From positions 1 to 64,000 of the forward strand of contig NIVC01001045.1 in NCBI GenBank assembly GCA_002269645.1: a DNA stretch of 64,000 bases, written 5' to 3'. This stretch comes from Macrostomum lignano (taxonomy: Eukaryota). The notes below the pieces were generated by a model. That model ran no database searches, had not been told where the DNA came from, and saw only the letters and a list, made by a program, of their open reading frames with translations. Position 1 is the stretch's first letter, and every line of letters begins with the position of its first letter. Positions 3,691-64,000 of the stretch are shown piece after piece. Position numbers and translations under genes: made by a program.

Positions 3691-4181
3691 CCTATCTATA
3701 TAAAATATGTAAGCTTTTTGTAATCATTTTGTATCATCATTATCATGTATCATTTTGTAAGCTTCCTATGAATAAACTCATTTCTGTTATTATTTATTAG
3801 GCCTGACTTAACGTTTTTAGCATTTTTTAGATATAAAAAACAATATAAAAACAAGAAGTTATTAAAGAAATTATTAAATTCAGGCAAAATAAAAATAGAA
3901 AATGCAAAATAAACTTCTTTGTTTCAAGTCCCAAATGCTAGTTTAGGGCTAATAAACTAGAATGTTATTATTTTAATAAATGTAAATGTATTTTAATATA
4001 TAAATTTAGATTTGAGTTTTCTTAAATTAGTGTAGTCTCACATCTGTACTCATACAGTCAGTTTACAAACTGGAGCACAAAAGGTTAACTGCTTGGTGCC
4101 CTGCTTCCTTTCACATTTGATGCTGTTGTTGCAGTTTCTCAGAAGCACTATTATCAACTCTCTGTCTAAGCTGAAGCAGTC

Positions 4182-5870: not shown

Positions 5871-5914
<44 letters not shown>

Positions 5915-13327: not shown

Positions 13328-13394
<67 letters not shown>

Positions 13395-13478
13395 TCTGTC
13401 TATCTATCTATCTGTCTATCTATCTATCTATCTGTCTATCTATCTATCTATCTATCTGTCTATCTATCTATCTATCTG

Positions 13479-13517
<39 letters not shown>

Positions 13518-21592: not shown

Positions 21593-21808
21593 AATCTTTT
21601 GCATTTGAATGTTTTCTTTATTGTTTATAAAACAATATTTTTCTTCTGCTTTTCATTTCTGTTCTTTTTCGATTTGAAATTAGTAATTATATAATTAGTT
21701 TAGACTAATCTACTAGCTATAGCAATTGTAAGGTCCTAAATAATAAAAAAATATTATTTAAATAACTTAATTTAAAAATAATATTTTGAAGATCATTAAG
21801 CAATCACA

Positions 21809-23531
21809 ATGTCTACTGAGGACAATGCCGCCAAGCAGTTGAGCGATTCTGAGCAGCCATCTGAGCAGCAGCAGCAGCAGCAGCAGGTATCGCCAGGCAA
21901 ACAAGATGAGAATCAACAACAGGCCTCTCCAACAATGCCTGGCGCTAACAATAGCACGGCTGGCCAGCAGCAGAAGCAGTACGCCAACAATTATAACAGC
22001 GGCAACGATCGTCAATTGACCGCTCGCGAACGCGCTCGAATGGAAGAGATCGCCGTGTTGGAGGCTGAACTGGCCGAACTAAACGGAGACGCGTTGCCGA
22101 ACGCTCGCCGATTGCTTGAATTAGAAATCCACCGACTGCGCTGGGGCGTCACGGAAATGGTCGACCTGTTAAACAATCGCCGTTGCAAGATTCGCAGCAA
22201 AGTGCTCATACCGCAGGACCAATTTCCTGGATTTAATTTTGTTGGCAAATTGTTAGGCCAAGGCGGAGCTAGTCTGAGGAAACTGCAGGAGGAGAGCAAC
22301 GTCAAGATGTCCATTCTAGGCGCCGGTTCAATGCGGAACGATCGCAGAGAGCAGGAGTGTCTGGAGACTGGCGAGGCCAAGTATCAGCATTTGAAGCAGA
22401 CCTTGCACCTGCAGATTGACTGCCTGGCCGATCCCCCCGAGGCCTATTATCGGATTGGGCACGCATTGGCCAAGGTGACCAGTCCGCTGGCTGACTCACT
22501 GACTGACTGACCCACTTGACCCACTTGACTGACTCACTGACTGACTCACTGACTGCCTGACTGACTGACTGACTGGCTCACTGACTGACTGACTGGCTCA
22601 CTGACTGACTGACTGACTGACTGACTGACTGACTGACTGACTGCCTGACTGACTGACTGACTGACTGACTGACTGACTGACTGACTGACTGACTGACTGA
22701 CTGACCCACTGCCTGACTCACTGACTGACTGACCCACTGACTGGCTCACTGATTGACCCACTGCTTGGCTCACTGACTGACTGACTCACTAACTGACTCA
22801 CTGACTGACTGTCAAATGCATTGTAAAAATTGCAACTCCATCCCCAGGTAAAGGAGGCCATGACGCCCGACCCGAACGAGCTGGCCAACTTCTACAACAA
22901 CCCGATGGCGCCTCATCCGCACATGCCTCCGCATCACTACGGCCCCGGCGGTTACGGTCCGGCGCATCATCATCCACATCACATGCCGCCGCCACCACTG
23001 CCGCCGCAGCCGCAGCCTCCGATGTCTCATCCGCCACCACCTCATCATCATCCGCATGCTTACACGACTGGCCCGCCGCCACAGCACCACCAGCAGCAGG
23101 TGCCGCCACCGCCGCCTCTGCCGCCGCAGCAGCAGCAACAGCAGGGCGGCCGCAACAACCGCCTAAGTGGTCGTGTTGGCGGCGGACTGGCTGGTTACAA
23201 TCCTCCAATCGGGGCGCAGCAGCCGTCTGGTCAAATGCGCGGCGGCGGTCGCGGCGGCCGCAACAACGGCGGAATGCGCTCGAGCACAGGCGGCAGCGCC
23301 AACGGTCAGCAGCAGCAACAGCAGCTGGCTCCTAACGCCGCAGGCGACGCCGGGCATATTAACAATAGTGAGGGCATTAATAATGGTGGCGGAAATGGCG
23401 CCGGCAAAGCCGGTGGTAGCAACGGTAATTGGCATCGAGGTGCTGCCCCGCGCGGCCAGCAGTATTATCAGCAGCAGCAGCAGCAGCAAGCTCGCGGTGC
23501 CGGCGGCAGCTACACACAGGCTACCGCTTAG
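21809..23531 (+). CDS. KHDRBS: STAR-family KH-domain RNA-binding protein, Sam68/SLM (KHDRBS)-like; exons 21809-22474 and 22848-23531
   Basis: QUA1-like helix pair (LEAELAEL...ARRLLELEIHRL); maxi-KH KVLIPQDQFPGFNFVGKLLGQGG...KMSILGAGSMR...YQHL...EAYYRIGHAL, matching the Sam68 pattern; phase-0 GT-AG intron; Pro/Gln-rich tail with RGG motifs. Confidence 0.9.
22488..22811. repeat. (GACT)n microsatellite filling the STAR-gene intron
   Basis: Directly visible. Confidence 0.95.
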
Positions 23532-40470: not shown

Positions 40471-42344
40471 TTAGGCAAAATACTTGGCCGCCGCCGCGTC
40501 CATTACGCTGGCCAGACGGACGTCCCGACTGGATATGCCGCCGCAGGAGTGCGTGGTCAGCGTGACGTCAACTCGATTGTAGACGTTGAACCACTCCGGG
40601 TGGTGGTCCAGCTTCTCAGCGTTCAGGGCCGAGTTGGTCATGAAGGAAAATGCCTGGAATTGGGAGAAAATATTAATTGATTTCGGGGCTCTGCGATTGA
40701 CTGCAAGTCACATCTCACCCACAATAGAATTCAGCAAGTCACATCTCACCCACAATAGAATTCAGCAAGTCAGATCTCACCCACAATATAATTCAGCAAG
40801 TCAAATCTCACCCACAATAGAATTCAGCAAGTCAGATCTCATCCACAATAGAATTCCGCAAGTCAGATCTCACCCACAATATAATTCAGCAAGTCACATC
40901 TCACCCACAATAGAATTCAGCAAGTCACATCTCACCCACAATAGAATTCAGCAAGTCACATCTCACCCACAATAGAATTCAGCAAGTCACATCTCACCCA
41001 CAATAGAATTCAGCAAGTCAGATCTCACCCACAATAGAATTCAGCAAGTCAGATCTCACCCACAATATAATTCAGCAAGTCACATCTCACCCACAATATA
41101 ATTCAGCAAGTCAGATCTCACCCACAATAGAATTCAGCAAGTCAGATCTCACCCACAATATAATTCAGCAAGTCAGATCTCACCCACAATATAATTCAGC
41201 AAGTCAAATCTCACCCACAATAGAATTCAGCAAGTCAGATCTCACCCACAATAGAATTCAGCAAGTCACATCTCACTCACAATAGAATTCAGCAAGTCAA
41301 ATCTCACCCACAATAGAATTCAGCAAGTCACATCTCACCCACAATAGAATTCAGCAAGTCACATCTCACCCACAATAGAATTCAGCAAGTCACATCTCAC
41401 TCACAATAGAATTCAGCAAGTCAAATCTCACCCACAATAGAATTCAGCAAGTCAAATCTCACCCACAATAGAATTCAGCAAGTCAGATCTCACCCACAAT
41501 ATAATTCAGCAAGTCAAATCTCACCCACAATATAATTCAGCAAGTCAGATCTCACCCACAATATAATTCAGCAAGTCAGATCTCACCCACAATAGAATTC
41601 AGCAAGTCAAATCTCACCCACAATATAATTCAGCAAGTCAGATCTCACCCACCACAATAGAATTCAGCAAGTCAGATCTCACTCACAATAGAATTCAGCA
41701 AGTCAGATCTCACCCACAATAGAATTCAGCAAGTCACATCTCACCCACAATAGAATTCAGCAAGTCAGATCTCACCCACAATATAATTCAGCAAGTCACA
41801 TCTCACCCACAATAGAATTCAGCAAGTCACATCTCACCCACAATAGAATTCAGCAAGTCAGATCTCACCCACAATAGAATTCAGCAAGTCAAAATCTCAC
41901 CCACAATAGAATTCAGCAAGTCAGATCTCACCCACAATAGAATTCAGCAAGTCAAATCTCACCCACAATAGAATTCAGCAAGTCAGATCTCACCCACAAT
42001 AGAATTCAGCAAGTCAGATCTCACCCACAATAGAATTCAGCAAGTCAGATCTCACCCACAATAGAATTCAGCAAGTCAGATCTCATCCATTCACAATAGC
42101 ACAATCTCAGTCACGCATAAGATGTTGCTTTACAATGGTTGTATTTTGCATTTGAGAGTCACAGTAAGCTGTAGGCCTACCCTTAAGAAAATCACCCTTA
42201 GGGAAATAGCATGCATACCTGCTGAAAATCCTTGAACTTGTAACTCTTGAAGATGGCATCGCGACCATCAACCAGTTTCCAACTGCTCTGCAGTAGTGGA
42301 TCCAGCAGCTCCTGTCTCTGCTCTGGGCTCAGCTTGGAAGGACC
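40471..42344 (-). CDS. PCBD: Pterin-4-alpha-carbinolamine dehydratase (PCD/DCoH); exons 42344-42219 and 40653-40471; start-codon exon not located with confidence
   Basis: [14 protein letters not shown]...[21 protein letters not shown] | AFSFMT...[24 protein letters not shown]...D...A*, containing the catalytic HHP motif; phase-0 GT-AG intron. Confidence 0.93.
40703..42085. repeat. 31-bp minisatellite (ATCTCACCCACAATAGAATTCAGCAAGTCAG) in the PCBD intron
   Basis: Directly visible. Confidence 0.97.
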
Positions 42345-45960: not shown

Positions 45961-46159
45961 AGAAGTAGTTAGGTCATTTCAATAGAGTAGAAGTTTACCC
46001 GGTGGCAATGGTGCGATTATAAAAGGATAGAACAAAACACCTACTACATTTATATGACGCTTATTTTATTTTTTGCATGCACACTTCTTTATGTCTGACA
46101 TGACGCTTCTTTTATGGGTTGCATGAATCTTCTTTTATGTACGACATGACAGCTTCTAG

Positions 46160-48079
46160 CCGAAGAAACTTGCCGGCTGTGGATGACACAGCGCCTCCGC
46201 GACCATCCGCAACCATCGGGGACGCCACGGCGAGACCCGTGGAGCAAAATCTGAGCGCAGTGCCTCCGAGAAGACACCTGCCACTCCAGCTGCCCAGCAG
46301 CTGAGCACCACCTCTGGAGCTGCCCGTCGTCGACTTAACAAGGCGAGGCGGGCCAAGGAGGGCGGAAGCCTAACCGGCGTCAGGGGCCAACAGCCCGCAG
46401 CAGTGAAAGCTTCCCAATCTGGGGCTGCGGCGGAAGAGGGCCCTGACCCCACTGAAGTCCCTGCCCAGGATAGGGAAGCTGATGCAGGTGGGAGGGTGGA
46501 CAGCCAACCCACCTGAAGACTCCACCGAACCCCGGGCCTCCTACGCTGAGTCGGCAGAGGCAACTGGTGGTTGTCATCCTGGGAAAGGACGTATGCCCGT
46601 CTCCCGACCAGCTGAAGCAGGTGAGCCGCACTGTTGATGGCCTCTTGTGGAAGCTCACTCTGAAGGGCACGCCTCTGAACATTCACTCGAATGCGACGAG
46701 GGACTCGTGCTGTCTTATTTGCCCCAGTGATGCTAACTCGGGACGACGGCTCCTTGAGCTGCTGCCCGAGCAGAGCTGGGACCTCAACCTAACCTTCTGC
46801 AGAGAGGACGAGTGCCCCCGGACCAAGAGGCTTCGAAGAATCTGGGTTCCGGCCAAGAGCGTCGTTACCTCTGCTGACGAGCTCCGGAAAGGACTGCTAG
46901 CAGTCAACCGAGAGCTCTCTACCGCGGGCCTAGTGATACATGACACCCTAATCTAAAGCGCACCGACGGCACCGGCTTCACATCCATCCTGGGGCTGTCG
47001 GACGCCTGGATGAGGCGCTATCCGCACGGCAGCTTCATCAACTTGCATGTACGCATCCGCTCGGCGGTCGGCGTAGGCCGACGGCGGTAAGCAGGGCGGG
47101 CGGGACGTGGAAGCGGCCGGGTCCGAGGCGGGAGCTTCTGCCCAGGCTCTCGAGGAGTGTGGTGAGCTCAACATCCTCACGGACTCGATCCTGAGCCAGA
47201 GGTATAAGGTCACTATTCAGCCTCCACACGAAAAGTCCACTTCTGAAGTCCACTGTTACACTGACGGCTCTATAAGGCATGGTCTTTCTGGCTTCGGAGC
47301 TTGCGTCTTCTTCAAGGGAGAAGTTGTGTGGAGCTACTCCCAGCACACTGGGCCCAACTCCAGTGTTTTTCAGAGCGAGGTGCTTGCCATCAGCTCCTGC
47401 GCGGCAGAGCTGCGCCGAAGGCAGCTTAGCGGTTGGAAATTTATTTTTCACTCTGACAGCCAAGCAGCCCTTCGGGCCCTCTGCCGCAGCACCACCAGCT
47501 CCAGGTCCGTCCTGGACTGCAACACCCAGCTCAACGGGCTTGCGCTAGGCAACCAGGTGGAGCTCAGATGGATCCCGGGCCACGCCGGTTTCCTCGGCAA
47601 CGAGCGCGCTGACCTGCTGGCCAAGGCTGGCTCCGCTGGCGCGCTGCTGGGGCCGGGCCCGGGAGCCCCCATCCTCGCCTCGGTGATCAACTCCCGCGTT
47701 AAGCGCTGGGCTGACTCCGAGCATCTCCGCAGGTGGCACGACACCCGGAATTGTAAGCAATCCCGTGCGGCCGTCCCCTGCCCCTCTCCTCTCCTGCGTA
47801 GAGCCCTCCTCAGGCTCAACCGCAGAGACCTCAGAGCAGTTAGCATGGCCCTCTCCGGGCATGGCTGCTTCTCTCGCCACCGCTTCCTTCAGGGCCAAGT
47901 ACCCGAGGAGCGGTGCCCCTTCTGCCCCTCAGGCAGTGAGAACGCCGAGCACTTTATCTGCCACTGCCCGTTTTCACCAGGGCCAGGCTCACTCACCTCG
48001 GGCCAAACTCGGATCTCTCCGACATTTGTATAGGCCCGAGAGCATCCTGCTGCTGGCCCGGTACCTCAGGGACACGTGA
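46160..48079 (+). mobile_element. Degenerate non-LTR retrotransposon (I/LOA-like): ORF1-like remnant joined to RNase H + C-terminal CCHC; no endonuclease or RT seen
   Basis: ORF 47107-48033 has the RNase H motifs YTDGS, FQSEV, SDSQAAL, WIPGH and GNERAD, then LSGHG and CPFC...EHFICHC. Upstream frames are interrupted; the ORF1 identity is inferred from position. Confidence 0.8.
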
Positions 48080-48239
48080 CGAGCTGAGTTCTTCCCCAAC
48101 GCCGTTGAGGAGGAAAAAGCGCTGCAGGCGAGACCTACGGGTCCCCCTGAGCGACATCACTTCGATGGAAGTCTTTGGTCGCCAGGGGCTAGCGGAATGG
48201 GCGGTATCCTCCGCCTCCTCGCTGCATCCGCCGGACGAT

Positions 48240-48588
48240 GCCCCCTGAAGCCGTCGAGGGCGCCCAGCGCCAGCTGGATCGGCTGTTAGGCGTTGCGGCG
48301 AGTGTCGGCCGGTGGTCAACACGCAGAAGACTGTCGTGTTCTGCGTGGCGGACGACATCGAGGCTGCAATTTTCTGCCGGGACGCTGACAAGCAGGTGAC
48401 GAGGCTTTCGTGTTGTCAGCAGTTTGTCTACCTCGGCGTTCTGGTGCCTGACGTTCACGAGGACTAGTGACGTCGCCGCGGACTTGCCAGGGCGGCCTTT
48501 CGTTCCGTGAGGGCTGTCCTGCAGTCCGAGGCCCTGCCTCACCGCCAGAGGGCGGCGTTGTTCCAGACGGTGATCGAGTCCGTCCTGT

Positions 48589-50634: not shown

Positions 50635-53600
50635 ATGGCTGCTACAGCAGGAAATGGCAGCATGGACTCTGTGACTACGCCAGCCAGTAAGTATGACTAT
50701 TGCAGATCTACCGAATGGTACATCTTCCTGGGCTGCAGTTTCGGAGTCTATGTCTGCATGCTCATACTCATCAGCGTCGGGCGGGTCGTCTGTCGGAGGA
50801 GTAAGCATCCCGAGGACAGTTCGGAAACTGACCAAGATGAAGACGAATTAAGCGGACAGCCTCACAGGCTGGGTAGTCAGGCTGGCATTGTCACCAGGGT
50901 TCACCTGTACAGCATGGCGCTGATGAAGGGAGCCAACAATCTGGGGAAATTTATGGTAAGTACATGTAGATTTTTTTCTATTTTAAACTTTTATTAGGAT
51001 CAAGATATTTTGTGCGAAGATGGGGGGTGTTACAGGTATGCACTGATGGGAAGATAATAGGGTAGGGAAACACAAAAGAGAGAGTCTTTGAGAGAGGAAT
51101 AGGGTACACTGAATGCGGTAAAGAGGATAGGATGGAGAGGATGGGATAGAGAGGATGGGATAGAGACGATAGGATAGAGACGATGGGATAGAGAGGATGG
51201 GATAGAGACGATAGGATAGAGATTATGGGATAGAGACGATGGGATAGAGACGATGGGATAGAGACGATGGGATAGAGACGATGGGATAGAGACGATGGGA
51301 TAGAGACGATGGGATAGAGACGATGGGATAGAGACGATGGGATAGAGATGATGGGATAGAGACGATGGGATAGCGAAGATGTGGATAGAGAGGATGTGGT
51401 AAAATATCTATTTTTATCAATATTCATAGGATTTAGACTGTCTACTAAAAATGCTATCAAAACATTTTTGCAACGATTAAATTTTTGCGTCTAACAAAAA
51501 ACTTGCAGCCAAGTTTTTTCCAAGGTGGTGACAAAAAAGCAGAAGAGTAGATAAAAAATTGAAGTTGGCTTTTTACAAAATGCGTATGTCATTATTCTAA
51601 CCTAATTCTAAGACCCATTAGTAAGGACTCTTAATTCACTTTATATCTGCTAATCGATGGTTATGACACCATTCTTGTTGATTTTTTCAGCTTCCATCAA
51701 TTGCGTACTAACCAAAACCAGCGTTGCTTAACTGACCAATAGCAGGAAGACTCGTTAAACACTAACCTATGCCTAGGACCCCATCATTGCAGTGATTCTT
51801 AGGCTTTTACACATCAGCAGCTCTCTATCGTTAACAAATTTCAGTTGGTGATTCACTCCCTCTGCGTCATCGCGTCCTTCGTCATCTACATCCTGATGAC
51901 CTATCAGTTCACAGACATCCAGACCGGGCCAATGGAAAGTCGCACTTTGTTGGTGTGCCATTCTACAAAGCATTTTCCTGTTGTGCACGTGGACTTTGCG
52001 ATTAACTTGTTCTATCTGGGATTTTTTATCATCAGGGTGAGATGCATTTTCTTCTTCTTTCGACTCGCTTGTACGTACTGGTGCAAGTTTTAGAATTCCT
52101 ATGCAAACACTGCGTTTGCTAAGTTATTTTCGCTACATATCGGCACTTGGTACAGATTTATAGAATTCTTAATGTGCACAGCCATCGACACGGATCACTG
52201 AGCTGGATTTCCTGACTCACTTGAATCTCTGACTCTGACTCTCGTGGTTCTCCAGAATCTGATTCTTTTCTGGCTGACTAACTCCGCCGCTCCTGACTCT
52301 CTAGCTCTCTGACTCTCTTGACTCTCTGACTCTCCTGACTCTCCTGACTCTCCTGACTCACTGACTCTCCTGACTCTCCCGACTCTCCTGACTCTCCCGA
52401 CTCTCCTGACTCTCCCGACTCTCCTGACTCTCCCGACTCTCCTGACTCTCCCGACTCTCCTGACTCTCCCGACTCTCCTGACTCTCCTGACTCTCTGACC
52501 ACTGGCTCTCCCGAATCTTGTGACTCTCTGACTCTGACTCTCCTGACTCTCTGACTCTCCCTGACTGTGACTCTCCCGACGCTCTGACTCTCCCTGACTG
52601 TGACTCTCCCGACGCTCTGACTCTCCCTGACTGTGACTCTCCCGACTCTCTGACTCTCCCTGACTGTGACTCTCCCGACTCTCTGACTCTCACTGACTGT
52701 GACTCTCTAACTCGGATTCTATGAGTAACGACTGCTTGGTTTATCGCTAATAAATATTCGAAAGAAAATTATCAAAAAAACTTCAATTCCAGCTTCTGTC
52801 AAGCAATTCACTGCAAGCATTCTGGCTGACCTTGGACACCATGGCTGACCACCTCACCCTGATCCCTTCCGTCATCATGTATGCCCTCAACAAGCACATG
52901 ATTGGTAAGCAGCCCGGGCTATCACTGCAGAACTGGAGTTTTTCCATAGTTGCTAAATGAATTGGGTCACAAACCAGCTTCGATTGAATAAGCCACCTTC
53001 ATTCACGCCACTGCACTTCAGTGTTCCAGTTCGCAAGAATCAATGGTCTGAAGTATTTGGTGAACTCCATGATCTATTGCAACATCCTGCGCACTGAGAA
53101 GTACATCAGACTGGTGTCCCTGCTGATTAGAATCATCTCCATCTGGGCCATCAGTGCGGGCCTCTACCAGCTGGTGAGTGTCCTCCCGGCACTCTCCCCC
53201 TGCACTCTCCCCTGCACGCTCCCCCGGCACTCTCCCCCTGCACTCTCCCCTGCACGCTCCCCCTGCACTCTCCCCTGCACTCTCCCCTGCACTCTCCCCT
53301 GCACTCTCCCCTGCACTCTCCCCCTGCACTGCACTCTCCTCCTGCACTCTCCCCTGCACTCTCCCCTGCACTCTACCCTGCACTCTCCTCCCGCACTCTC
53401 CTCCCGCACTCTCCCCTGCACTCTCCCCTGCACTCTCCCCTGCACTCTCCCCTGCACTCTCCCCTGCACTCTCCTTCCGCACTCTCCTTCCGCACTCTCC
53501 CCTGCACTCTCTCCTGCACTCTCCCCTGCACTCTCCCCTGCACTCTCCCCTGCACTCTCCCCTGCACTCTCCCCTGCACTCTCCCCTGCACTCTCCCCTG

Positions 53601-56600
53601 CACTCTCCCCTGCACTCTCCTTCCGCACTCTCCCCTGCACTCTCCTCCCTGCACTCTCCTCCCTGCACTCTCTCCGTGCACTCTCCCCCTGCACTCTCCC
53701 CTGCACTCTCCTCCCTGCACTCTCCCCTGCACTCTCCTCCCTGCACTCTCCCCGTGCACTCTCCCCTGCACGCTCCCCCGGCACTCTCCCCCTGCACTCT
53801 CCCCTGCACGCTCCCCCTGCACTCTCCCCTGCACTCTCCCCTGCACTCTCCTCCCTGCACTCTCCCCCTGCACCCTCCCCCGCACTCTCCCCCTGCACTT
53901 TCCCCCTGCACTCTCCTCCCTGCACCCTCCCCCGCACTCTCCTCCCTGCACTCTCCCCCTGCACCCTCCCCCTGCACCCTCCCCCGCACCCTCCCCCTGC
54001 ACTCTCCCCCTGCACCCTCCCCCTGCACCCTCCCCCGCACCCTCCCCCTGCACTCTCCCCCTGCACCCTCCCCCGCACTCTCCCCCTGCATTCTCCTCCC
54101 TGCACGCTCCTCCCTGTATCCTCCCTGCATTCTCCTTCCCTGCATTCTCCTTGCCTGCATTCTCCTCCCTGCACTCTCCTTCCCTGCATTCTCCACCCTT
54201 CAATCTCTTTCTTCCATTCGCCATACCACAATCGCCCAACACCAACCAGATTGAGAACGTGGGCGATTTCTGGCGCAAAGACGGCCTGACCAACGCTGTG
54301 TTTCACCAATACCACGATTGCTTCTACTATATGCTGATCACAATGAGCACAGTTGGCTACGGCGATATTTCGCCTCACTCCGTGATTGGAAAATTTTACA
54401 TCATCATTTTTATTGTTGTGGCGTTGGTAAGTTAACAGGCATGGACACTTGTCTTGTGTAAGGGTAACAACATGACCAGTATAAACATCATATCATTGTA
54501 GGGGCTGTTCACCAGCATCATTCCCGAGGTGTCCGACATTTTGACCGAGAAGAAAAAGTACAGAAGAAATCGAGTACACTTGAAGTCAGGAAAAAAGTAA
54601 GCTGAGAAAGAAAAGGACCCCAGTGATCTCTGATTGAGCCCGCATGTTGACTTCAAATTTCAGACACGTGGTTGTGGTTGGAAAGTTCACCTGCCAAATG
54701 ATGAAGACATTTTTCGACGATTTTTTTCATTCCGAGAGAGCCTCCAACGCGCGCGAATACGTTGCTATGCTGGGACTGTAAGTGCGAGAAATTTTCAGGA
54801 ATTTTAAAGAGTTTATTGCTCGTAGATATTTTTGACACAATCAGCCTCAATGCACCCCTTGCGATCAAATCAAATCAACTAATCAAATTATTCAAGGCCA
54901 TTCAAAATGGAAATTTCTCTAGCAGATACGTCTAGCTCAAGGTCACTCAGAGTGGAAATTTCTCTAGCAGATACGTCTAGCTCAAGGTCACTTAGAGTGG
55001 AAATTTCTCTAGCAGATACGTCTAGCTCAAGGTCACTTAGAGTGGAAATTTCTCTAGCAGATACGTCTAGCTCAAGGTCACTTAGAGTGGAAATTTCTCT
55101 AGCAGATACGTCTAGCTCAAGGTCACTCAGAGTGGAAATTTCTCTAGCAGATACGTCTAGCTCAAGGTCACTTAGAGTGGAAATCTCTCTAGCAGATACG
55201 TCTAGCTCAAGGTCACTTAGAGTGGAAATCTCTCTAGCAGATACGTCTAGCTCAAGGTCACTTAGAGTGGAAATTTCTCTAGCAGATACGTCTAGCTCAA
55301 GGTCACTTAGAGTGGAAATCTCTCTAGCAGATACGTCTAGCTTAAAGTCGCTCAGAGTGGAAATTTCTCTAGCAGATACGTCTAGCTTAAAGTCGCTCAG
55401 AGTGGAAATTTCTCTAGCAGATACGTCTAGCTCAAGGTCACTCAGAGTGGAAATCTCTCTAGCAGATACGTCTAGCTTAAAGTCGCTCAGAGTGGAAATT
55501 TCTCTAGCAGATACGTCTAGCTCAAGGTCATTGGGATGAGGGACAACATCGCCGAAGGCGTTGCGCTAGGGTGCCCGCGGCCCCTGAAATTATAATTATT
55601 TATCATATTAGTACACTATTTTTACTATATCATGGGGCGCCAATTTTCTAGTTGAGAGGTCGCCGAAAGTTACATTATCTCCGCATAAAGTACATCATTT
55701 TCCATCCAATAAAACTTTAGCGACGAGCCGGACCTGGAGCTGAAAGCGCTGATCAAGACCCGGGAGCTGTACGTGACCTACCTGCAGGGGAGCGTCATGT
55801 GCGTGAAAGACCTGCAGCGAGCCTGCTTGAAACAAGCCTCGGCCGTTGTTGTCATCTCCGATCAGCAGACTCGAAACGAAGAGGACGAAGATATGAAAAA
55901 TATCATGCGGGTGATTGCGGTCAAGGATTTTTGTCCGGATGTCCAGGTGCTGGTGCAGCTACAGCTCTATAGGAGCAAAACCTACCTGAGGAATATTCCT
56001 GACTGGAGGCCAATGCATGGGGACCAGGTGAGATTTCGCTGAAGAGAATAAAACCTATGAGAGATAACGTCACACGCTAGATTGAGATTATGAGATCACC
56101 TGACTGACTAAAATTGCGTCACCTACAAGTGAGCTTTGACCTTTAGGATGACGTCACCAGCTAGTATAGACTGAGATGACGTCACCACATCATCAGCTAG
56201 TATAGACTGAAGTGCAGTCACTAGCTAGTATAAACTGAGATGACGTCACCAGCTAGTATAAGACTGGACCATAGATAATTAATTAGTGTTTTTAGTATTT
56301 GTGGACTGGACTAAGACAACCTGGTTTTCGAACCTTCGGGGAACTGACATCACGTTAAACTGAAATGAAGTCAAAATCAAGATGACGTCATCTTTAAGAC
56401 GGAGATGATTCTTCATTACCTTAATTAACTTTGTAACCGAAAAAGTGTAAATAAACTTTTCAGGCTATCTGCATTAACGAGCTTAAATACGGGATTCTAG
56501 CTCAGAGCTGCCTTGTTCCCGGCCTGTCAACTCTGCTCTGCAACTTGCTCATGCTGCGCTCCTGCAAAAGCAACCAGTTCCCACAGTTCTCTTGGCAGGA

Positions 56601-59600
56601 AGCTTACTTGCACGGAGTTGAGTACGAATTCTACAAGGTAAGTGACCAAGTTCATGCAGTTCGTATAAGAAAAACTGGATGGGACCACTCGGCTAACTCA
56701 ATGTACATAAGTAGGCTTTACTGTGTACGATGCTATCCTCTCTTTCCTCCTTGAATTTCTATTGGATAATTCTCTCGACCAGTTATTTTTGCCAAGGTCA
56801 ATCACGTGTTGGCTGAGTGAGGGAAAGTACTATATCCAAGGACTTCGTACAAAGGGGCTTCCACAATAAACTTATTAAAATTTCTCAAAATAGCAGCCAC
56901 TTAAAACAATCAATCAATAAAATGGTGTAAGAACTTATTATTGATAGGAACTGGGACATGTCTTAATCCTTTAATGGAGGGGCCATTTTAAGCCCCTTTT
57001 AAAATCAGCCGACACGTGACTGACCTTGAAGACTGACCTTTCTCGGTTTCCTCGAGAAAAGTTCTAAAAATAGCAACCAATAATAACCATCAGCCAATGA
57101 TACTCGGACTTAAATTAATGAATCTCAGGTTCGATTCTCAGCCAATTTCAACGGCATGACTTTTCTAAAAGCGGCTGAAGTGTGCGCAGACAGACTGGGC
57201 ATTGTCCTCCTGGCTGTGGAGGATGGGAAAAGTGGTCAGAGGCGTACTATTATTAACCCTGGCTGTGGATTAAAGATCGACACGGACGTTATGGAAGCTT
57301 TTGTGATTGCCACTGACGAGCGAGAGGCCAGACGGTAGGTTGTTTAGCTTCCTTATTTATTTACACAATAGCTTTGCCTAATCGATGTGATTCTTTAGCT
57401 AATCTATACTGTAATATAGGCATCTGTACTGTAATTTAGGCATCTGTACTGTAATTTAGGCATCGTTCCAGTATGTTATGAGTCTTTACTGTAATTTTGG
57501 GATCCGCACAGTTATTAAAAATCCGACTTTACTCATTTAAACTTACCCGCCAAGTACTTGATCGATAAGTCAACAATCCAGCCTCGTGGCAAGTACCGCC
57601 TAAGTACTTTCCAAGTTTTCCAAGTACATTCGATAAGAACTTTCCAAGTCTGCAATGTTATCTCCAGTCACTTCTCAAGTAATTTCCAAGTACTTGGATG
57701 TAGAGACCGGGCGTGTACGTTGTAAACTTTGCAAGTCGATTGAAATTGGGCAACAACATTGCACACTTTTTAAGTTCATGACAATGATACTTTGCAAACT
57801 TGGTAAGTCAATAATGTCATCCAAGTACATGGTTGACTTGGGAAGTTTAGCATGTTTTTCCCGGATACGGTGTAGCAACTGCCTACATGCATAATCAAGG
57901 AAAAAGTCTTTTAATGAAATAGTCACAGAGTGTTTTGTTAAAACTTTGTAATTGAATTTTTATAGCCTATCAGATTATGCTTGTGTATCAAGCAACTCGC
58001 GTAAGTACTCAATATTTTTTAAACACTATTTACATCAATAAGTTTAAAACTCTAATATTTATTCTAAACCGTCATTTGAATTGACGCAAACTCCTCGTGC
58101 ACTTTAACAAACGTTTTCTTTCATTAATTGTTAAAAAAAATTTTACGCGATAACTGGACATTGTTTTGTGCACTAGCAGCAGCTTAACAAAACTTTAAAC
58201 TTCAAGTATTATAAATCGAATGAATTTTCTTAATTTTTACAATAAAACGGTCATTCCCCGAAACTTCACTCCCCAGATTTCACTCGCCTAAAAAAACTAC
58301 TCCAAACATCTCACGCTGGCCCCTAAAATTTTCAGTCCCAGAAATCTACAGCCTAAAGACACTCACTTAGCTGGGGATACTTCCAACTGATGTAATCCGT
58401 TTCTAGTGCTCCAAAATCAGGGACTACTTAACAACTTAGGACGTGACACTCGCGAGTTGTTAAGTAGTCCTTGCAAAAAATATGCTGGAAGATTTTTTTG
58501 AGTCCACAGCGCACCGCAGTTTCACCCGCTCCAGCTACTACTCATCAGATTAATAATTACGCGTATATTTAAACTCACCAATAAGCGCGGCAACTGCTGC
58601 AGCCACCTGCTTTTCCGCTCACGCGATCTCTAAAACTGCCGCAACTAACCCGCTCGCAGAGTGACCACTTACTTGGTTGAGCAACCGCGCGACTGCCAAT
58701 GCTGCGGCTTCTCGTGGGGCCGCGGTCAGCGGGTTACCCCATCATCGGCTGAGGTGACCAGCTGTGTGAGACTAAATAGCATTGTAGTCAGCGCTGCAGA
58801 GGCTGGTGAGTTCTGCTCATCTGGACTCGCAGACCGCTAACCTAGAGCTGCTGGCTTAGGCTTTGGTAACTGCAACTCTTGAAACCATGGCGGCGCGCTG
58901 TGGACCTCACCTGAGATATTTTATCAAGAACCAATCCTGCTACGAGTAACAGATTTTAGCCAAGCTTTTATGTTACTAGCGTAGTATGTATGCTATTTTA
59001 TTGTCTAACAAATAAACTAACTTGAAGTTTTTTTAACTTTAAGTTTAGTGTTAAATTTTCTAAATACTTAAAAGATTACTCATATAACTGATCTGTCAGT
59101 AAGGGGTCGCGAAATCTGATGGATTCCTCAGTGTGATTGTCGGGAAATCTGATGGATTCCTCAGTGTGATTGTCGCGAAATCTGATGGATTCCTCAGTGT
59201 GGTTGTCGCGAAATCTGATGGATTCCTCAGTGTGATTGTCGGGAAATCTGATGGATTCCTCAGTGTGATTGTCGGGAAATCTCATGGATTCCTCAGTGTG
59301 GTTGTCGGGAAATCTGATGGATTCCTCAGTGTGGTTGTCGCGAAATCTGATGGATTCCTCAGTGTGATTGTCGGGAAATCTGATGGATTCCTCAGTGTGG
59401 TTGTCGGGAAATCTGATGGATTCCTCAGTGTGGTTGTCGCGAAATCTGATGGATTCCTCAGTGTGATTGTCGGGAAATCTGATGGATTCCTCAGTGTGAT
59501 TGTCGGGAAATCTCATGGATTCCTCAGTGTGGTTGTCGGGAAATCTCATGGATTCCTCAGTGTGGTTGTCGGGAAATCTGATGGATTCCTCAGTGTGGTT

Positions 59601-62600
59601 GTCGCGAAATCTGATGGATTCCTCAGTGTGATTGTCGGGAAATCTGATGGATTCCTCAGTGTGATTGTCGGGAAATCTCATGGATTCCTCAGTGTGGTTG
59701 TCGGGAAATCTCATGGATTCCTCAGTGTGGTTGTCGGGAAATCTGATGGATTCCTCAGTGTGGTTGTCGCGAAATCTGATGGATTCCTCAGTGTGATTGT
59801 CGGGAAATCTCATGGATTCCTCAGTGTGGTTGTCGGGAAATCTGATGGATTCCTCAGTGTGGTTGTCGGGAAATCTGATGGATTCCTCAGTGTGATTGTC
59901 GGGAAATCTCATGGATTCCTCAGTGTGATTGTCGGGAAATCTGATGGATTCCTCAGTGTGGTTGTCGCGAAATCTGATGGATTCCTCAGTGTGATTGTCG
60001 GGAAATCTGATGGATTCCTCAGTGTGATTGTCGGGAAATCTCATGGATTCCTCAGTGTGGTTGTCGGGAAATCTGATGGATTCCTCAGTGTGGTTGTCGG
60101 GAAATCTGATGGATTCCTCAGTGTGATTGTCGCGAAATCTGATGGATTCCTCAGTGTGGTTGTCGGGAAATCTCATGGATTCCTCAGTGTGGTTGTCGGG
60201 AAATCTGATGGATTCCTCAGTGTGATTGTCGGGAAATCTGATGGATTCCTCAGTGTGATTGTCGGGAAATCTGATGGATTCCTCAGTGTGATTGTCGCGA
60301 AATCTGATGGATTCCTCAGTGTGATTGTCGGGAAATCTGATGGATTCCTCAGTGTGGTTGTCGGGTAATCTCATGGATTCCTCAGTGTGATTGTCGGGTA
60401 ATCTCATGGATTCCTCAGTGTGATTGTCGGGAAATCTCATGGATCTCTCAGTGTGGTTGTCTGGAAATCTCATGGATTCCTCAGTGTGATTGTCGGGAAA
60501 TCTCATGGATCCCTCAGTGTGATTGTCGGGAAATCTGATGCATTCCTCAGTGGGTATCGGGAACTCTCATGGATCTCTCAGAACTGGTTCAACCGTAATA
60601 CTAACAGTAGTGTATAGTAGTTGCATATAATAAAATTTTACACTATCTGAATTTGCAGTCAAACTGGACTCCAGCCTGGACTATCGCGGCTGCAGCGAAA
60701 ACCCGGACAGCTGTCGACACGGAGAAAAGCTTAGGTAAAGTCTATTCTGTTTTAATAAATTTATAGCAATATAATACCTAGGCAAAATTCGTCAATAAAT
60801 AATTAAAATACAATAATTTGCGTCTTAGCACTCGCAACGACAATCGGCCACTTTTTGAGCTTGAGTACATTGTTGATGGAGAATGTGAGCAGTAAGTATT
60901 ACTAGAGGCTAACTTTAGGAATAAAAGTTTATCAACTTTTTTTATAAGTAAAAGCAGTCTTTTTATATACGCTTCTTTTTTCTAAATCACCAAATTATAA
61001 GAAAATAACACCTTACCAAGCAGATCAATATTGTATAGTGCTGAACTTATATTTTGTGCGCACGTAGAAAAATTATAACTATACACATTTTGTTTTATTG
61101 TTTATTTATAATCTTGTAGTTTAAGCACGTTTAATTAGAAGCCATTATCATATTTTATTTTGCCTTTTCTGGGCAATTTAATTAGCCGGTTTCGTTACGT
61201 TCTTGCACGCTCTGCTACCACTTTGTAGCGTCTGCTAGATCAGAAGCCAAATGTGCACACAATATTAGATTCAGCATGTGGGGCAGGGAGTGAGGTGGGC
61301 GTCGCGAGAAAGGCAGGAAGAAGCCAATGGGCACACTTATCGGATTCAGCATGTGGGGCAGGGAGTGAGGTGGGCGTCGCGAGAAAGGCAGGAAGAAGCC
61401 AATGGGCACACAATATCAGATTCAGCATGTGGGGCAGGGAGTGAGGTGGGCGTCGCGAGAAAGGCAGGAAGAAGCCAATGGGCACACAATATCAGATTCA
61501 GCATGTGGGGCAGGGAGTGAGGTGGGCGTCGCGAGAAAGGCAGGAAGAAGCCAATGGGCACACAATATCAGATTCAGCATGTGGGGCAGGGAGTGAGGTG
61601 GGCGTCGCGAGAAAGGCAGGAAGAAGCCAATGGGCACACAATATCAGATTCAGCATGTGGGGCAGGGAGTGAGGTGGGCGTCGCGAGAAAGGCAGGAAGA
61701 AGCCAATGGGCACACAATATCAGATTCAGCATGTGGGGCAGGGAGTGAGGTGGGCGTCGCGAGAAAGGCAGGAAGAAGCCAATGGGCACACTTATCGGAT
61801 TCAGCATGTGGGGCAGGGAGTGAGGTGGGCGTCGCGAGAAAGGCAGGAAGAAGCCAATGGGCACACAATATCAGATTCAGCATGTGGGGCAGGGAGTGAG
61901 GTGGGCGTCGCGAGAAAGGCAGGAAGAAGCCAATGGGCACACTTATCGGATTCAGCATGTGGGGCAGGGAGTGAGGTGGGCGTCGCGAGAAAGGCAGGAA
62001 GAAGCCAATGGGCACACAATATCAGATTCAGCATGTGGGCAGGGAAGAAGGTGAGTGTCTGGAAAAGAGCCAAGTGGAAGCTTGGAAATGATTGCTCCAA
62101 TCAATCTGCAGACTTTGCTCGGTGGACGCTGGGAACCAAAATGAAGGAGCCTCATCATCGGAGTCTGAGCGCATCCTGTTGGACTCGAGCGGCTACTTCC
62201 ACTGGGCCCCGAATCACTCGATGGAGCAGGCGATGCTGCAGCCGAATACGCAGTACAATTTTCACGGTCACATTGTCGTCTGCGTGATGGAGAAGAGCGG
62301 CAAGGTGTGCCTGAACCTCACCACCTTTGTGATGCCACTGCGAGCTAGCAGCATCAGGCCCAGCAAGCTGAAGGACATCGTTTTCGTTGGAGCTATCGAC
62401 GTCATTCGCAACGAGTGGCCAATCATACAGAATTTTCCAAGAATTCACGTTCTAGATGTGAGCTGGTTAATTGTTTGATTTTTATAGGAACAAAATTTGG
62501 ACGCCTCACCACGAATGAGACAGTTTGTAAGGATTCAGTCACAGGTGAGACAAACAGGTCATAATGACTCAGCCACAGGTGGGACACACAGGTCATAATG

Positions 62601-64000
62601 ACTCAGCCACAGGTGAGACACACAGGTCATAATGACTCAGCCACAGGTGGGACACACAGGTCATAATGACTCAGCCACAGGTGAGACACACAGGTCATAA
62701 TGACTCAGCCACAGGTGAGACACACAGGTCATAATGACTCAGCCACAGGTGAGACAAACAGGTCATAATGACTCAGCCACAGGTGGGACACACAGGTCAT
62801 AATGACTCAGCCACAGGTGAGACACACAGGTCATAATGACTCAGCCATAGGTGGGACACACAGGTCATAATGACTCAGCCACAGGTGGGACACACAGGTC
62901 ATAATGACTCAGCCACAGGTGGGACACACAGGTCATAATGACTCAGCCACAGGTGAGACACACAGGTCATAATGACTCAGCCACAGGTGAGACACACAGG
63001 TCATAATGACTCAGCCATAGGTGAGACACACAGGTCATAATGACTCAGCCATAGGTGAGACACACAGGTCATAATGACTCAGCCATAGGTGAGACACACA
63101 GGTCATAATGACTCATTTTTGCGCACTTTACGCACGTAAAGGGATCCCCGCTGAACCGAGCCAACCTAAAAGCGGTCAACATCGAGTCGTGCCACAGTTG
63201 CATCATCCTATCGCCGAAGTCCACCCCGTACGAGCCGGACGCACAGATGGACCGCGAGACAATCCTGTGCACGTTGAACATCAAAACGATGAAGAAACCT
63301 GGGACGCAGAAGAAACTGGGCGATTGTATTCACATCATAACCGAGCTGAAGACTGAAGATGCCATTGCCTATTTAGATCAGGACGACGATGATGAGGTTG
63401 AAGAGCCCTACATGACTCAGGCCTTTGCCACGGGTAGAACCTTCTTCTTGAGCTTGTTGGGCTCGATAGTCACTACGGTAAGTCGAACTCGATTGCAATA
63501 CGTGCCTCTTTATTTCGTCTCGTATATTGAGTGAGGGATGGTTTTGGCCTGACGCTCTATGGAGTCTGCGTACATTGAGTGAGTGAGGGAAGGGTTTGGC
63601 CTGATTCTCTATGGAGTCTGCGTACATTGAGTGAGTGAGGGAAGGGTTTGACTTGATCGTCTATAGGGTATGGAGTCTGCGTAAATTGAGTGAGTGAGGG
63701 AAGGGTTTGGCCTGATTCTCTATGGAGTCTGCGTACATTGAGTGAGTGAGGGAAGGGTTTGGCCTGATTCTCTATGGAGTCTGCGTACATTGAGTGAGTG
63801 AGGGAAGGGTTTGGCCTGATTCTCTATGGAGTCTGCGTACATTGAGTGAGTGAGGGAAGGGTTTGGCCTGATTCTCTATGGAGTCTGCGTACATTGAGTG
63901 AGTGAGGGAAGGGTTTGGCCTGCTAGCCTGTGTGTACAATTCACACAGAAAAAAAGCGAACAGATGTACATTGACCCAGCTCCCTACAAAACGCTGCAGA
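50635..64000 (+). CDS. slo: Divergent Slo1/BK-type large-conductance K+ channel, 3' incomplete; exons 50635-50955, 51845-52036, 52793-52904, 53022-53173, 54250-54426, 54502-54596, 54664-54777, 55721-56027, 56464-56637, 57129-57334, (60675-60734), (60829-60891), 62112-62457, 63142-63477, 63964->64000
   Basis: S0 helix, S1-S6 and filter TMSTVGYGD; RCK1 (HVVVVG, YLQGSV, NIMRVIAVK, ELKYGILAQSCLVPGLSTLLCNL); RCK2 (HIVVCV, FVMPLRAS, GSPLNRANLKAVNI); Ca-bowl DQDDDDE. Splice phases are consistent throughout; exons in brackets are tentative. Confidence 0.93.
51125..51395. repeat. 14-bp minisatellite (GACGATGGGATAGA) in Slo intron 1
   Basis: Directly visible. Confidence 0.92.
52200..52712. repeat. 9-bp-based repeat (CTCTCCTGA / CTCTCCCGA) in Slo intron 2
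   Basis: Directly visible. Confidence 0.92.
53180..54195. repeat. 12-bp minisatellite (CTCTCCCCTGCA) in Slo intron 4
   Basis: Directly visible. Confidence 0.95.
54907..55530. repeat. 45-bp minisatellite in Slo intron 7, about 14 copies
   Basis: 15-aa periodic ORF EISLADTSSSRSLRV. Confidence 0.95.
59108..60560. repeat. 33-bp minisatellite (GAAATCTGATGGATTCCTCAGTGTGATTGTCGG) in Slo intron 10
   Basis: 11-aa periodic ORFs on both strands. Confidence 0.97.
61255..62040. repeat. 75/76-bp minisatellite, 10 units plus a partial one
   Basis: Directly visible; ORF starts are spaced 76 bp apart. Confidence 0.95.
62540..63116. repeat. 34-bp minisatellite (GTGAGACACACAGGTCATAATGACTCAGCCACAG), about 17 copies
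   Basis: Directly visible. Confidence 0.97.
63525..63920. repeat. 52-bp minisatellite in a Slo intron
   Basis: Directly visible. Confidence 0.92.

What the first reader, a model, noticed from the sequence alone, without database searches (positions are those of the whole stretch)
53021..53075. BK-type channel that keeps the Ca2+ bowl but has lost its main S4 gating charge
Seen: a gap-free alignment of S4 gives KHMIVFQFARINGLKYLVN versus Slo1 RSWLGLRFLRALRLIQFSE, so R207>Q, R210 kept, R213>G and E219>N. The S2/S3 charges (D153, R167, D186 equivalents), S0, the TVGYG filter, the S6 acidic ring (PEVSD) and the Ca bowl (DQDDDDE) are kept. In RCK1, D362, E374, R514 and E535 equivalents are kept, with D367>E and Mg-site E399>T; the S6 GG hinge is VA. 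Established: R213 is the principal S4 gating charge of Slo1. Inference: a largely voltage-independent, Ca2+-gated large-conductance K+ channel, a naturally evolved BK subtype.
Basis: partly seen in the sequence, partly recalled or inferred. Interest (0 to 1): 0.7.

Follow-up and report, generated by a model that had tools for sequence, protein, structure and literature searches.

The report
Flatworm BK-like channel with one-arginine S4
This is a real, selectively constrained gene of the flatworm Macrostomum lignano for a BK-type calcium-activated potassium channel whose voltage-sensor helix keeps only one of its three arginines; it is a useful untested natural variant, but probably not voltage-blind, and such variants are common.

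Summary
Window 50635-63477 (+) carries 14 GT/AG exons of a Slo1 (BK)-like gene. They match residues 1-881 of Macrostomum lignano protein BOX15_Mlig020881g2 apart from one residue. The S4 helix (KHMIVFQFARINGLKYLVN) is split by a 117-bp intron and aligns without gaps to Slo1: R207>Q, R210 kept, R213>G, E219>N. All other residue claims checked out.

The gene is not an artefact. Its GenBank model comes from RNA-seq transcripts. A second genomic copy differs by 14 synonymous and 1 non-synonymous change (dN/dS 0.02). Two M. lignano paralogues, 53-57% identical, keep the same Q-R-G-N pattern and the same intron. No alternative S4 exon exists in the window. A canonical R-R-R Slo1 coexists in the genome, so this is a distinct paralogue subtype.

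Neutralising R213 in Slo1 removes about half the gating charge, not all of it. R210, now regarded as a co-equal gating charge, is retained. R207Q and E219 loss shift gating the opposite way to R213 loss.

Replacement of R213 is also widespread: 45 of 75 divergent Slo-like cluster representatives lack it.

Most likely this is a Ca2+-activated, weakly voltage-dependent channel. No function has been tested.

The parts
50635..50955 (+). Exon 1: start codon, extracellular N-terminus, S0 helix (50716-50790) and S0-S1 linker
   Evidence: ATG at 50635 and GT donor. The segment aligns to Aplysia S0. AlphaFold predicts a helix at residues 28-55.
51845..52036 (+). Exon 2: S1 and S2, with the D153 and R167 equivalents (HVDFAINLFYLGFFIIR, 51986-52036)
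52793..52904 (+). Exon 3: S3 (D186 equivalent in MADHLTLIP, 52841-52867) and the first four S4 residues KHMI (52892-52903). It ends in phase 1.
53022..53173 (+). Exon 4: the rest of S4 (VFQFARINGLKYLVN, to 53065), the S4-S5 linker and S5. Q211 is the R207 site, R214 the R210 site, G217 the R213 site and N223 the E219 site.
   Evidence: It is the only S3-S5-like coding stretch in the window.
54250..54426 (+). Exon 5: turret, pore helix, TVGYGD filter (54349-54366) and the start of S6
54502..54596 (+). Exon 6: end of S6 with the inner acidic ring PEVSD (54523-54537), and the C-linker
54664..54777 (+). Exon 7: start of RCK1, with the D362, H365, D367>E and E374 equivalents (DDFFHSE, 54716-54736)
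55721..56027 (+). Exon 8: RCK1, including the E399>T site
56464..56637 (+). Exon 9: RCK1 (R514 equivalent)
57129..57334 (+). Exon 10: end of RCK1 (E535 equivalent)
57966..58000 (+). Exon 11: 35-nt micro-exon of the RCK1-RCK2 linker
60659..60734 (+). Exon 12: linker
62112..62457 (+). Exon 13: start of RCK2. It carries the one residue that differs from P0001 (G717 here, S in P0001).
63142..63477 (+). Exon 14: RCK2 with the Ca bowl DQDDDDE (63376-63396). The last ~148 residues of the protein lie beyond the window end.

Best explanation
The window carries most of Mlig020881, an expressed and selectively constrained gene of Macrostomum lignano. It encodes a Slo1 (BK)-type K+ channel alpha subunit that belongs to a three-gene paralogue subfamily.

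Shown by sequence and modelling:
- The full Slo1 architecture is present: S0, S1-S4, a TVGYGD pore, an inner acidic ring, and tandem RCK1/RCK2 domains with a Ca bowl.
- The voltage-sensor charge network is cut down to a core of D153, R167, D186 and R210.
- R207, R213, E219, D133 and E180 are neutral.
- The Mg2+-site ligands D99 and E399 are gone.

Inferred from Slo1 mutagenesis:
- The channel is opened mainly by intracellular Ca2+ through the retained Ca bowl and the RCK1 site.
- It lacks Mg2+ activation.
- It keeps a reduced voltage dependence, not zero: roughly half the sensor charge via R210, plus the intrinsic charge of the pore.
- The losses of R207 and E219, which favour the active sensor, offset the loss of R213, which favours the resting sensor.

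The voltage range of activation cannot be predicted from sequence.
For: Gene and identity:
- Fourteen GT/AG exons give one open reading frame that matches P0001 residues 1-881 apart from one residue.
- P0001 is annotated on NIVC01000163.1. The GenBank models for that assembly derive from genome-guided RNA-seq transcripts (PMC5730564).

Constraint:
- A second genomic copy shows 14 synonymous and 1 non-synonymous difference, dN/dS 0.020, binomial p = 8e-9. Introns of the two copies are 92-100% identical.
- Paralogues Mlig015491 and Mlig020874 are 53-57% identical to this gene. They keep Q-R-G-N, a K/R at position 215, and the intron that splits S4.
- S4 is as conserved within the three paralogues (43% invariant) as S2 (50%) and S5 (51%).

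Family membership:
- PDB sequence hits are Slo1 at 1e-109 to 1e-96, against the Slo3 gating ring at 1e-40 and Slo2.2 at 4e-29.
- The top 50 fold matches are all Slo1, and gating-ring TM-scores reach 0.92.
- Pfam finds Ion_trans, Slo-like_RCK twice, BK_channel_a and Slowpoke_C.

Literature:
- R213 neutralisation cuts zJ by 0.30 e, about 50% (PMC2151507).
- R210 and R213 are both gating charges, and R207, E219 and E180 neutralisation shift V0 to negative voltages (PMC9231616).
- Aplysia R1Q shifts V0 from 173 to 6 mV. R3Q is silent at 0 Ca2+ but adopts the open conformation when Ca2+ is bound (PMC12218146).
- R213 mutants abolish Mg2+ sensitivity (PMC2174156).
Against: - There are no functional data for this protein or for any relative that lacks R213.
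- Point-mutant effects in mammalian or Aplysia Slo1 may not transfer to a protein only 30-35% identical to them.
- In Aplysia Slo1 the single R213-equivalent mutant gave no macroscopic current without Ca2+, so a much larger loss of voltage gating is possible.
- D367>E and N449>D might alter Ca2+ affinity.
- The transcript evidence concerns the whole annotation pipeline. I could not inspect reads across the exon 3-4 junction.
- The last ~148 residues are outside the window.
Confidence: 0.55

Rival explanations
1. One reading: a largely voltage-independent, purely Ca2+-gated large-conductance K+ channel. On this view the S1-S4 domain survives only as a structural scaffold.
For: - Two of the three S4 arginines are neutral, together with E219, D133 and E180.
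- The Aplysia R3Q mutant (R213Q equivalent) gave no voltage-activated macroscopic current at 0 Ca2+ but adopts the open conformation when Ca2+ is bound (PMC12218146).
- Human R213Q has V0 = +394 mV, outside any physiological range (PMC9231616).
Against: - R210, D153, R167 and D186 are invariant in the three paralogues and nearly invariant across 75 Slo-like representatives. That points to a working sensor core.
- R213 neutralisation removes at most about 50% of the charge (PMC2151507).
- R210Q on its own lowers zQ (PMC9231616).
- S4 is conserved as strongly as other helices in the three paralogues.
- BK pore opening itself carries about 0.3 e (PMC2151507).
Confidence: 0.2
2. Voltage dependence is essentially normal for a BK channel. 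On this view the sensor is decentralised (D153, R167, D186, R210), or the conserved K/R at position 215 takes over from R213.
For: - Ma et al. assign at least half of the gating charge to S2 and S3 residues, all of which are kept here (PMC2151507).
- A basic residue two positions after G213 is conserved in all three paralogues: K, K and R.
- R207Q and E219 loss push activation to negative voltages and could restore a physiological V1/2.
Against: - Gating-current work found that D153, R167 and D186 do not carry charge (PMC9231616).
- Position 215 is out of the i+3 register of S4 arginines.
- Every R213 neutralisation tested lowers the voltage sensitivity.
Confidence: 0.15
3. It does not work as a homotetramer. 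It would be a modulatory subunit that co-assembles with the canonical Slo1 or other Slo paralogues of M. lignano and tunes their voltage range.
For: M. lignano has at least six Slo-family loci, so partners exist. Heteromers are known among Slo2 subunits; this is my own knowledge and was not tested here.
Against: The pore, the filter and both Ca2+ sites are complete, so nothing suggests a defective subunit. No co-expression data exist.
Confidence: 0.08
4. It is a decaying duplicate or a mis-predicted gene model, and the real transcript uses another S4 exon.
For: The M. lignano genome is highly duplicated (PMC5730564), and the introns are full of minisatellites.
Against: - The open reading frame is intact over 14 exons with canonical splice sites.
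- dN/dS between the two copies is 0.02.
- The same S4 pattern and the same intron position occur in two old paralogues.
- The model derives from transcripts.
- tblastn with nine Slo S3-S5 queries finds no other S4-like exon in the 64 kb.
Confidence: 0.02

Closest known systems
Slo1 / BK (KCNMA1, slowpoke, SLO-1), e.g. Aplysia Slo1 5tj6 and human Slo1 6v22
   Same: - S0 plus six transmembrane segments, a TVGYGD filter and an inner acidic ring.
- Tandem RCK1/RCK2 gating ring with Ca-bowl residues D892, D895 and D897.
- RCK1 residues D362, E374, R514 and E535.
- VSD residues D153, R167, D186 and R210.
- It is the best sequence and fold match.
   Different: - Only 30-35% identical to canonical Slo1 proteins; the one canonical pair measured (Helobdella and a vertebrate Slo1) is 64% identical.
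- R207>Q, R213>G, E219>N, D133>M and E180>T.
- Mg2+-site ligands D99>L and E399>T; also D367>E.
- It is a separate clade from the canonical Slo1 of the same species.
Engineered S4-neutralised BK mutants (human R207Q, R210Q, R213Q; Aplysia R196Q, R199Q, R202Q; PDB 9di8, 9dit, 9dkf)
   Same: The natural S4 equals R1Q plus R3 neutralised on one subunit. The top PDB sequence hit is the Aplysia R196Q mutant itself.
   Different: The mutants are single substitutions in an otherwise canonical sensor. Here the changes are combined, sit alongside loss of the countercharges E219, D133 and E180, and have been fixed by selection in three paralogues.
Slo2 (KCNT1/2, SLO-2)
   Same: It has an RCK-bearing gating ring and a charge-poor S4. 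Slo2 channels show only weak voltage dependence (my own knowledge).
   Different: Slo2 lacks S0 and the Ca bowl. Its sequence match is far weaker (4e-29 against 1e-109). Slo2-like sequences form a 100%-supported outgroup.
Slo3 (KCNU1)
   Same: It is a divergent Slo1-derived paralogue with altered ligand sensing.
   Different: The probable Slo3 representatives keep R207, R210 and R213; their identity as Slo3 is my assignment from the S4 motif. The Slo3 gating ring matches less well than that of Slo1 (1e-40 against 4e-54). The window protein keeps the Ca bowl.
Uncharacterised Slo1-like paralogues lacking R213 in other animals
   Same: R210 is kept and R213 is replaced in:
- Tubulanus (R-R-G-E)
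- Owenia (I or L)
- Acanthaster (I)
- Hydra (Y)
- Paramacrobiotus (Y or N)
- Penaeus indicus (Q-R-F)
- Calicophoron (N-R-S)
- Opisthorchis (N-R-C)

   Different: None groups with the M. lignano subfamily with support; pairing the three paralogues with Tubulanus gets 4% bootstrap. Most keep R207. The trematode forms have lost the Ca bowl.

Membership tests
Slo1 / BK | Extra N-terminal transmembrane helix S0 | tested here: met
   Residues 26-52 align to Aplysia S0. AlphaFold predicts a helix at 28-55 with pLDDT about 81-84.
Slo1 / BK | K+ pore with TVGYGD filter and inner-vestibule acidic ring (E321/E324) | tested here: met
   TVGYGD at 54349-54366. PEVSD gives E321=E and E324=D. The role of the ring in conductance is described in PMC2213566.
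Slo1 / BK | Tandem RCK1-RCK2 gating ring | tested here: met
   Pfam finds Slo-like_RCK twice, BK_channel_a and Slowpoke_C. Fold TM-scores to BK gating-ring crystal structures are 0.87-0.92.
Slo1 / BK | Ca bowl (D892, D895, D897) | tested here: met
   DQDDDDE at 63376-63396, with all three Asp present. Binding itself was not tested.
Slo1 / BK | RCK1 high-affinity Ca2+ site (D367, R514, E535) | tested here: inconclusive
   R514 and E535 are kept; D367>E is conservative; M513>L. The effect on affinity is unknown.
Slo1 / BK | S4 with the R207/R210/R213 arginine triad | tested here: not met
   The pattern is Q/R/G, so only R210 remains.
Slo1 / BK | Mg2+ site (D99, N172, E374, E399) acting on R213 | tested here: not met
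   D99>L, E399>T and R213>G; N172 and E374 are kept. E399 is also absent from the other flatworm and nemertean Slo proteins examined.
Slo1 / BK | Orthology with canonical bilaterian Slo1 | tested here: inconclusive
   - NJ tree with 300 bootstraps: the three paralogues form a clade at 100%, but its deeper position is below 50%.
- The canonical M. lignano pair (Mlig032474 and Mlig033054, 81%) branches elsewhere.
- All are inside the non-Slo2 group.
- Long branches are present and no maximum-likelihood tool was available.
Slo1 / BK | Large conductance with dual Ca2+ and voltage activation | not testable with these tools
   This needs electrophysiology.
Slo2 (KCNT) | No S0, uncharged S4, no Ca bowl, closest sequence relatives are KCNT proteins | tested here: not met
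   S0 and the Ca bowl are present. The Slo2.2 match is 4e-29 against 1e-109 for Slo1. The Slo2-like outgroup has 100% support.
Slo3 (KCNU1) | Vertebrate paralogue with a degenerate Ca bowl and an intact S4 triad | tested here: not met
   The Ca bowl is intact and the S4 triad is not. The Slo3 gating ring matches less well than that of Slo1.

The most novel reading that the evidence does not exclude
A conserved flatworm Slo1 subfamily has naturally reduced the BK voltage sensor to a single S4 arginine (R210) plus the D153/R167/D186 core. It has done so by neutralising residues that push the sensor in opposite directions: R207 and E219 against R213.

If the channel proves to be a Ca2+-gated BK with little or no sensor charge, it would be a natural separation of Ca2+ gating from voltage gating. 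If instead it keeps about half the charge carried by R210 alone, it would be an evolutionary test of the dispute over which S4 arginine carries the BK gating charge.
Probability: 0.2. Interest if true: 0.65.

Novelty: new variant of a known kind. Interest (0 to 1): 0.45.

Why it matters
Which residues carry the gating charge of BK channels is still debated. One view holds that charge is spread over S2-S4. The other holds that R210 and R213 alone carry it.

Here evolution has fixed a sensor that keeps R210, D153, R167 and D186 but lacks R207, R213 and E219, and has held it under strong purifying selection in three paralogues. Recording from it beside the canonical Slo1 of the same animal, with G>R, Q>R and N>E reversions, would test the mutagenesis-based models in a natural background.

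The wider survey shows that R213 is the least conserved and R210 the most conserved S4 arginine across divergent Slo-like proteins. That fits the newer emphasis on R210. It also points to a large uncharacterised pool of 'R213-less' BK-like channels in invertebrates.

The survey also lowers the singularity of this one gene. The protein is already in public databases as an automatically named 'BK channel'.

Tried and rejected
- **Alternative S4 exon.** I ran tblastn with the S3-S5 segments of nine Slo proteins, canonical ones included, against the whole window at E<10. Only 52793-53173 matched; the rest was low-complexity noise in minisatellites.
- **Pseudogene.** Rejected on the intact reading frame, dN/dS of 0.02 and conserved paralogues.
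- **Co-loss of R213 and the Mg2+ ligand E399 across the family.** I expected this because Mg2+ acts through R213. It is not supported: Fisher p = 1.0 on 75 representatives. E399 is missing from most divergent Slo-like proteins whatever they have at position 213.
- **Sister relationship with the G213-bearing Tubulanus protein.** This got 4% bootstrap. A single clade of all divergent flatworm Slo proteins got only 47%.
- **The VA 'hinge' as a special feature.** Rejected, because the canonical M. lignano Slo1 and other invertebrate Slo1 proteins also lack GG.
- **Literature.** Searches for flatworm or Macrostomum Slo/BK channels and for Slo-family evolution found no description of this subtype.
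- **Orthologues outside M. lignano.** Two word-indexed searches and one exhaustive HMMER search found none; the best foreign hit is 37% identical.
- **AlphaFold.** It confirmed the fold but gives no side-chain geometry, so it says nothing on sensor function.
Full report
**What is at the coordinates**

The flagged bases are the 5' end of an internal exon on the + strand. Reading the DNA and assembling open frames between canonical AG/GT sites gave ten exons. Translated, they form one continuous Slo-type channel sequence. Using the database protein as a guide, I added a 35-nt micro-exon, a 76-nt exon and two RCK2 exons.

The final model has 14 exons between 50635 and 63477. All have AG acceptors and GT donors, and together they encode 881 residues. 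The last ~148 residues lie beyond the window end.

S4 is split by a 117-bp phase-1 intron. KHMI and the first base of the Val codon end exon 3 (52892-52904). VFQFARINGLKYLVN begins exon 4 (53022-53065).

**Identity**

The model matches residues 1-881 of P0001 apart from one residue (G717 here, S717 there). P0001 is Macrostomum lignano BOX15_Mlig020881g2, which UniRef names 'BK channel'.

Against solved structures the best sequence matches are:
- Aplysia Slo1: E = 1e-109 to 4e-109
- Drosophila Slo: 3.5e-98
- human Slo1: 1.4e-96
- Slo3 gating ring: 1e-40
- Slo2.2: 4e-29

(all)

An AlphaFold model reached mean pLDDT 76. It places helices where S0-S6 are expected, with S4 at residues 211-227 and pLDDT 80-86. 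Its 50 best fold matches are all Slo1 structures.

**Checking the residue claims**

For human numbering I used a KCNMA1 sequence recalled from memory as a ruler. It shows the expected residue at all 31 published positions I checked. MAFFT then gave the table:
- **Kept:** D153, R167, N172, D186, R210, the filter residues T287 and Y290 (the full TVGYGD motif was read from the translation), E321, D362, H365, E374, R514, E535, D892, D895, D897.
- **Changed:** R207>Q, R213>G, E219>N, E324>D, D367>E, E399>T, GG310/311>VA.
D99>L, D133>M, E180>T, R201>K, N449>D, M513>L.

Every statement in the finding is therefore correct. The VA hinge is shared with the canonical M. lignano Slo1, so it is not informative.

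**Is it a real, working gene?**

Four lines of evidence say yes.

1. *Transcript support.* P0001 is annotated on NIVC01000163.1. GenBank models for that assembly were derived from a genome-guided RNA-seq transcriptome, not from ab initio prediction (PMC5730564).
2. *Purifying selection.* That contig is a second copy of the locus, with introns 92-100% identical to the window. The 2,643 coding bases differ at 15 sites: 14 synonymous and 1 non-synonymous. This gives dS 0.024, dN 0.0005 and dN/dS 0.020, with binomial p = 8e-9.
3. *Conserved paralogues.* Two further M. lignano loci are only 53-57% identical to this gene: Mlig015491 (P0002/P0177) and Mlig020874 (P0178). Both carry the same Q-R-G-N pattern and a K/R at position 215. 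Both have the same intron splitting S4. Within these three paralogues S4 is 43% invariant, comparable to S2 (50%) and S5 (51%).
4. *No alternative exon.* No other S3-S5-like exon exists anywhere in the 64 kb.

**Family context**

M. lignano has at least six Slo-family loci:
- the three paralogues with the Q-R-G-N pattern
- a canonical Slo1, Mlig032474 (R-R-R-D)
- Mlig033054 (R-R-H-D)
- Mlig020928 (N-R-R-E, no Ca bowl)

In a bootstrapped NJ tree the three paralogues form a clade at 100%. They are separate from the canonical M. lignano pair (81%) and from the canonical Slo1 of parasitic flatworms (100%). They lie inside the non-Slo2 group. Their deeper position is unresolved, below 50%, and long branches are involved.

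No orthologue was found outside M. lignano. The closest foreign protein is a nemertean (Tubulanus) Slo1-like protein, 37% identical, with an R-R-G-E pattern.

An exhaustive HMMER search of 1.84 billion cluster representatives returned 75 Slo-like sequences with R/K at position 210 and R/K at position 167. Only 30 of them have R at 213. The others have W (15), Y (11), H (4), G (3), N (3) and others. R is present at position 207 in 56 of the 75; position 210 was R or K by the selection rule, so these counts say nothing independent about it.

Named examples lacking R213 come from annelids, a sea star, Hydra, a tardigrade, a shrimp and trematodes. Loss of R213 is thus a recurrent natural state in divergent Slo1-like paralogues. 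Loss of both R207 and R213 is rarer.

**Mechanism**

The sequence shows a complete BK architecture with a pared-down sensor. What this does to gating is inference from Slo1 mutagenesis.
- Ma et al. found that neutralising R213 lowers zJ by only 0.30 e. They regarded the resulting ~50% loss of total charge as an upper limit for the contribution of S4 (PMC2151507).
- Carrasquel-Ursulaez et al. found that R210Q and R213Q each reduce zQ. R213Q moves V0 to +394 mV. R207, E219, E180 and D186 neutralisations move it to negative voltages, and D133, D153 and R167 neutralisations move it to positive voltages (PMC9231616).
- In Aplysia Slo1, R1Q shifts V0 from 173 to 6 mV. R3Q gives no current without Ca2+ but still adopts the open conformation when Ca2+ is bound (PMC12218146).
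- R213 mutants abolish Mg2+ activation (PMC2174156).

The flatworm protein combines changes that favour the resting sensor (R213, D133) with changes that favour the active sensor (R207, E219, E180). It keeps R210 and the invariant D153/R167/D186 core, and it lacks two Mg2+ ligands.

My best reading is a Ca2+-activated, Mg2+-insensitive K+ channel with reduced but not absent voltage dependence. 'Largely voltage-independent' is possible but is the less likely outcome.

**Comparison and novelty**

By architecture, fold and Ca2+-site residues it is a Slo1-family member. It fails two classical Slo1 features, the S4 arginine triad and the Mg2+ site, and it is not the orthologue of canonical Slo1. 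I file it as a new variant of a known kind.

The protein is already in databases under an automatic name. I found no paper on it or on any R213-less natural BK relative.

Interest is moderate. It is a clean natural test case for BK voltage sensing. It is, however, one of many such paralogues, and its phenotype is unmeasured.

Noticed in passing
window 4170-18885 (+), array at 5923-13335: An alanyl-tRNA synthetase gene lies here. Pfam tRNA-synt_2c matches 4170-4946 and 13910-14617, and I read a probable C-terminal exon near 18610-18885. One intron holds a 7.4-kb tandem array of 27 copies of a 273-bp unit at 99% identity.
   Followed up: partly
window 21800-22507 (+): An open frame with a KH (KHDC4/BBP-like) RNA-binding domain and a Gln-rich N-terminus. 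The gene model was not built.
   Followed up: no
window 40474-40707 (-) and about 42201-42344 (-): A pterin-4a-carbinolamine dehydratase (PCD/DCoH) exon, Pfam E = 2e-20. A likely upstream exon lies on the far side of a 1.4-kb, 31-bp-unit minisatellite at 40703-42089.
   Followed up: partly
window 46100-48400: A retroelement remnant with an RNase H domain lies at 47077-48030 (+). The other genomic copy (L001) has about 1.9 kb of extra sequence at the point matching window ~47146.
   Followed up: no
window 51122-63922, introns of the Slo gene: Seven of the 13 introns inside the window, and the sequence after exon 14, hold a long minisatellite with units of 9-76 bp. One is 73-84 copies of a C-rich 12-bp unit that fills intron 4 right after the S4 exon. 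Intron lengths differ between the two genomic copies, for example 889 against 1334 bp and 2658 against 2052 bp.
   Followed up: partly
paralogue Mlig015491 (P0002/P0177; L003): This sister paralogue shares the Q-R-G-N S4 pattern but has D367>G, E324>A, H365>S and Ca-bowl D897>M (DQDDEME). Both high-affinity Ca2+ sites look damaged, so it may be a Ca2+-insensitive member of the subfamily.
   Followed up: partly
M. lignano proteins P0043/P0221, P0224, P0080: The species has at least six Slo-family loci. Besides the three paralogues with the Q-R-G-N pattern there is a canonical R-R-R Slo1, one with H at position 213, and a very divergent one (N-R-R-E) without a Ca bowl.
   Followed up: partly
representative proteins P0009-P0013, P0031, P0059, P0065-P0070, P0086, P0087 and others: A large, unnamed clade of Slo-like proteins from ENA/JGI assemblies has a fixed Trp at the R213 position and H374/Q399. 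Its taxonomic origin could not be found.
   Followed up: partly
PDB hits 9di8 / 9dic: The top PDB hit is an engineered Aplysia Slo1 R196Q mutant: 9di8 by sequence and 9dic by fold. R196Q is the R207Q equivalent, and the flatworm protein naturally has Q at that site.
   Followed up: yes
L001 26901-34563: In the other genomic copy the genes downstream of the channel encode an IRF-domain protein and a GCV_T/CAF17-like protein. They lie beyond this window.
   Followed up: no
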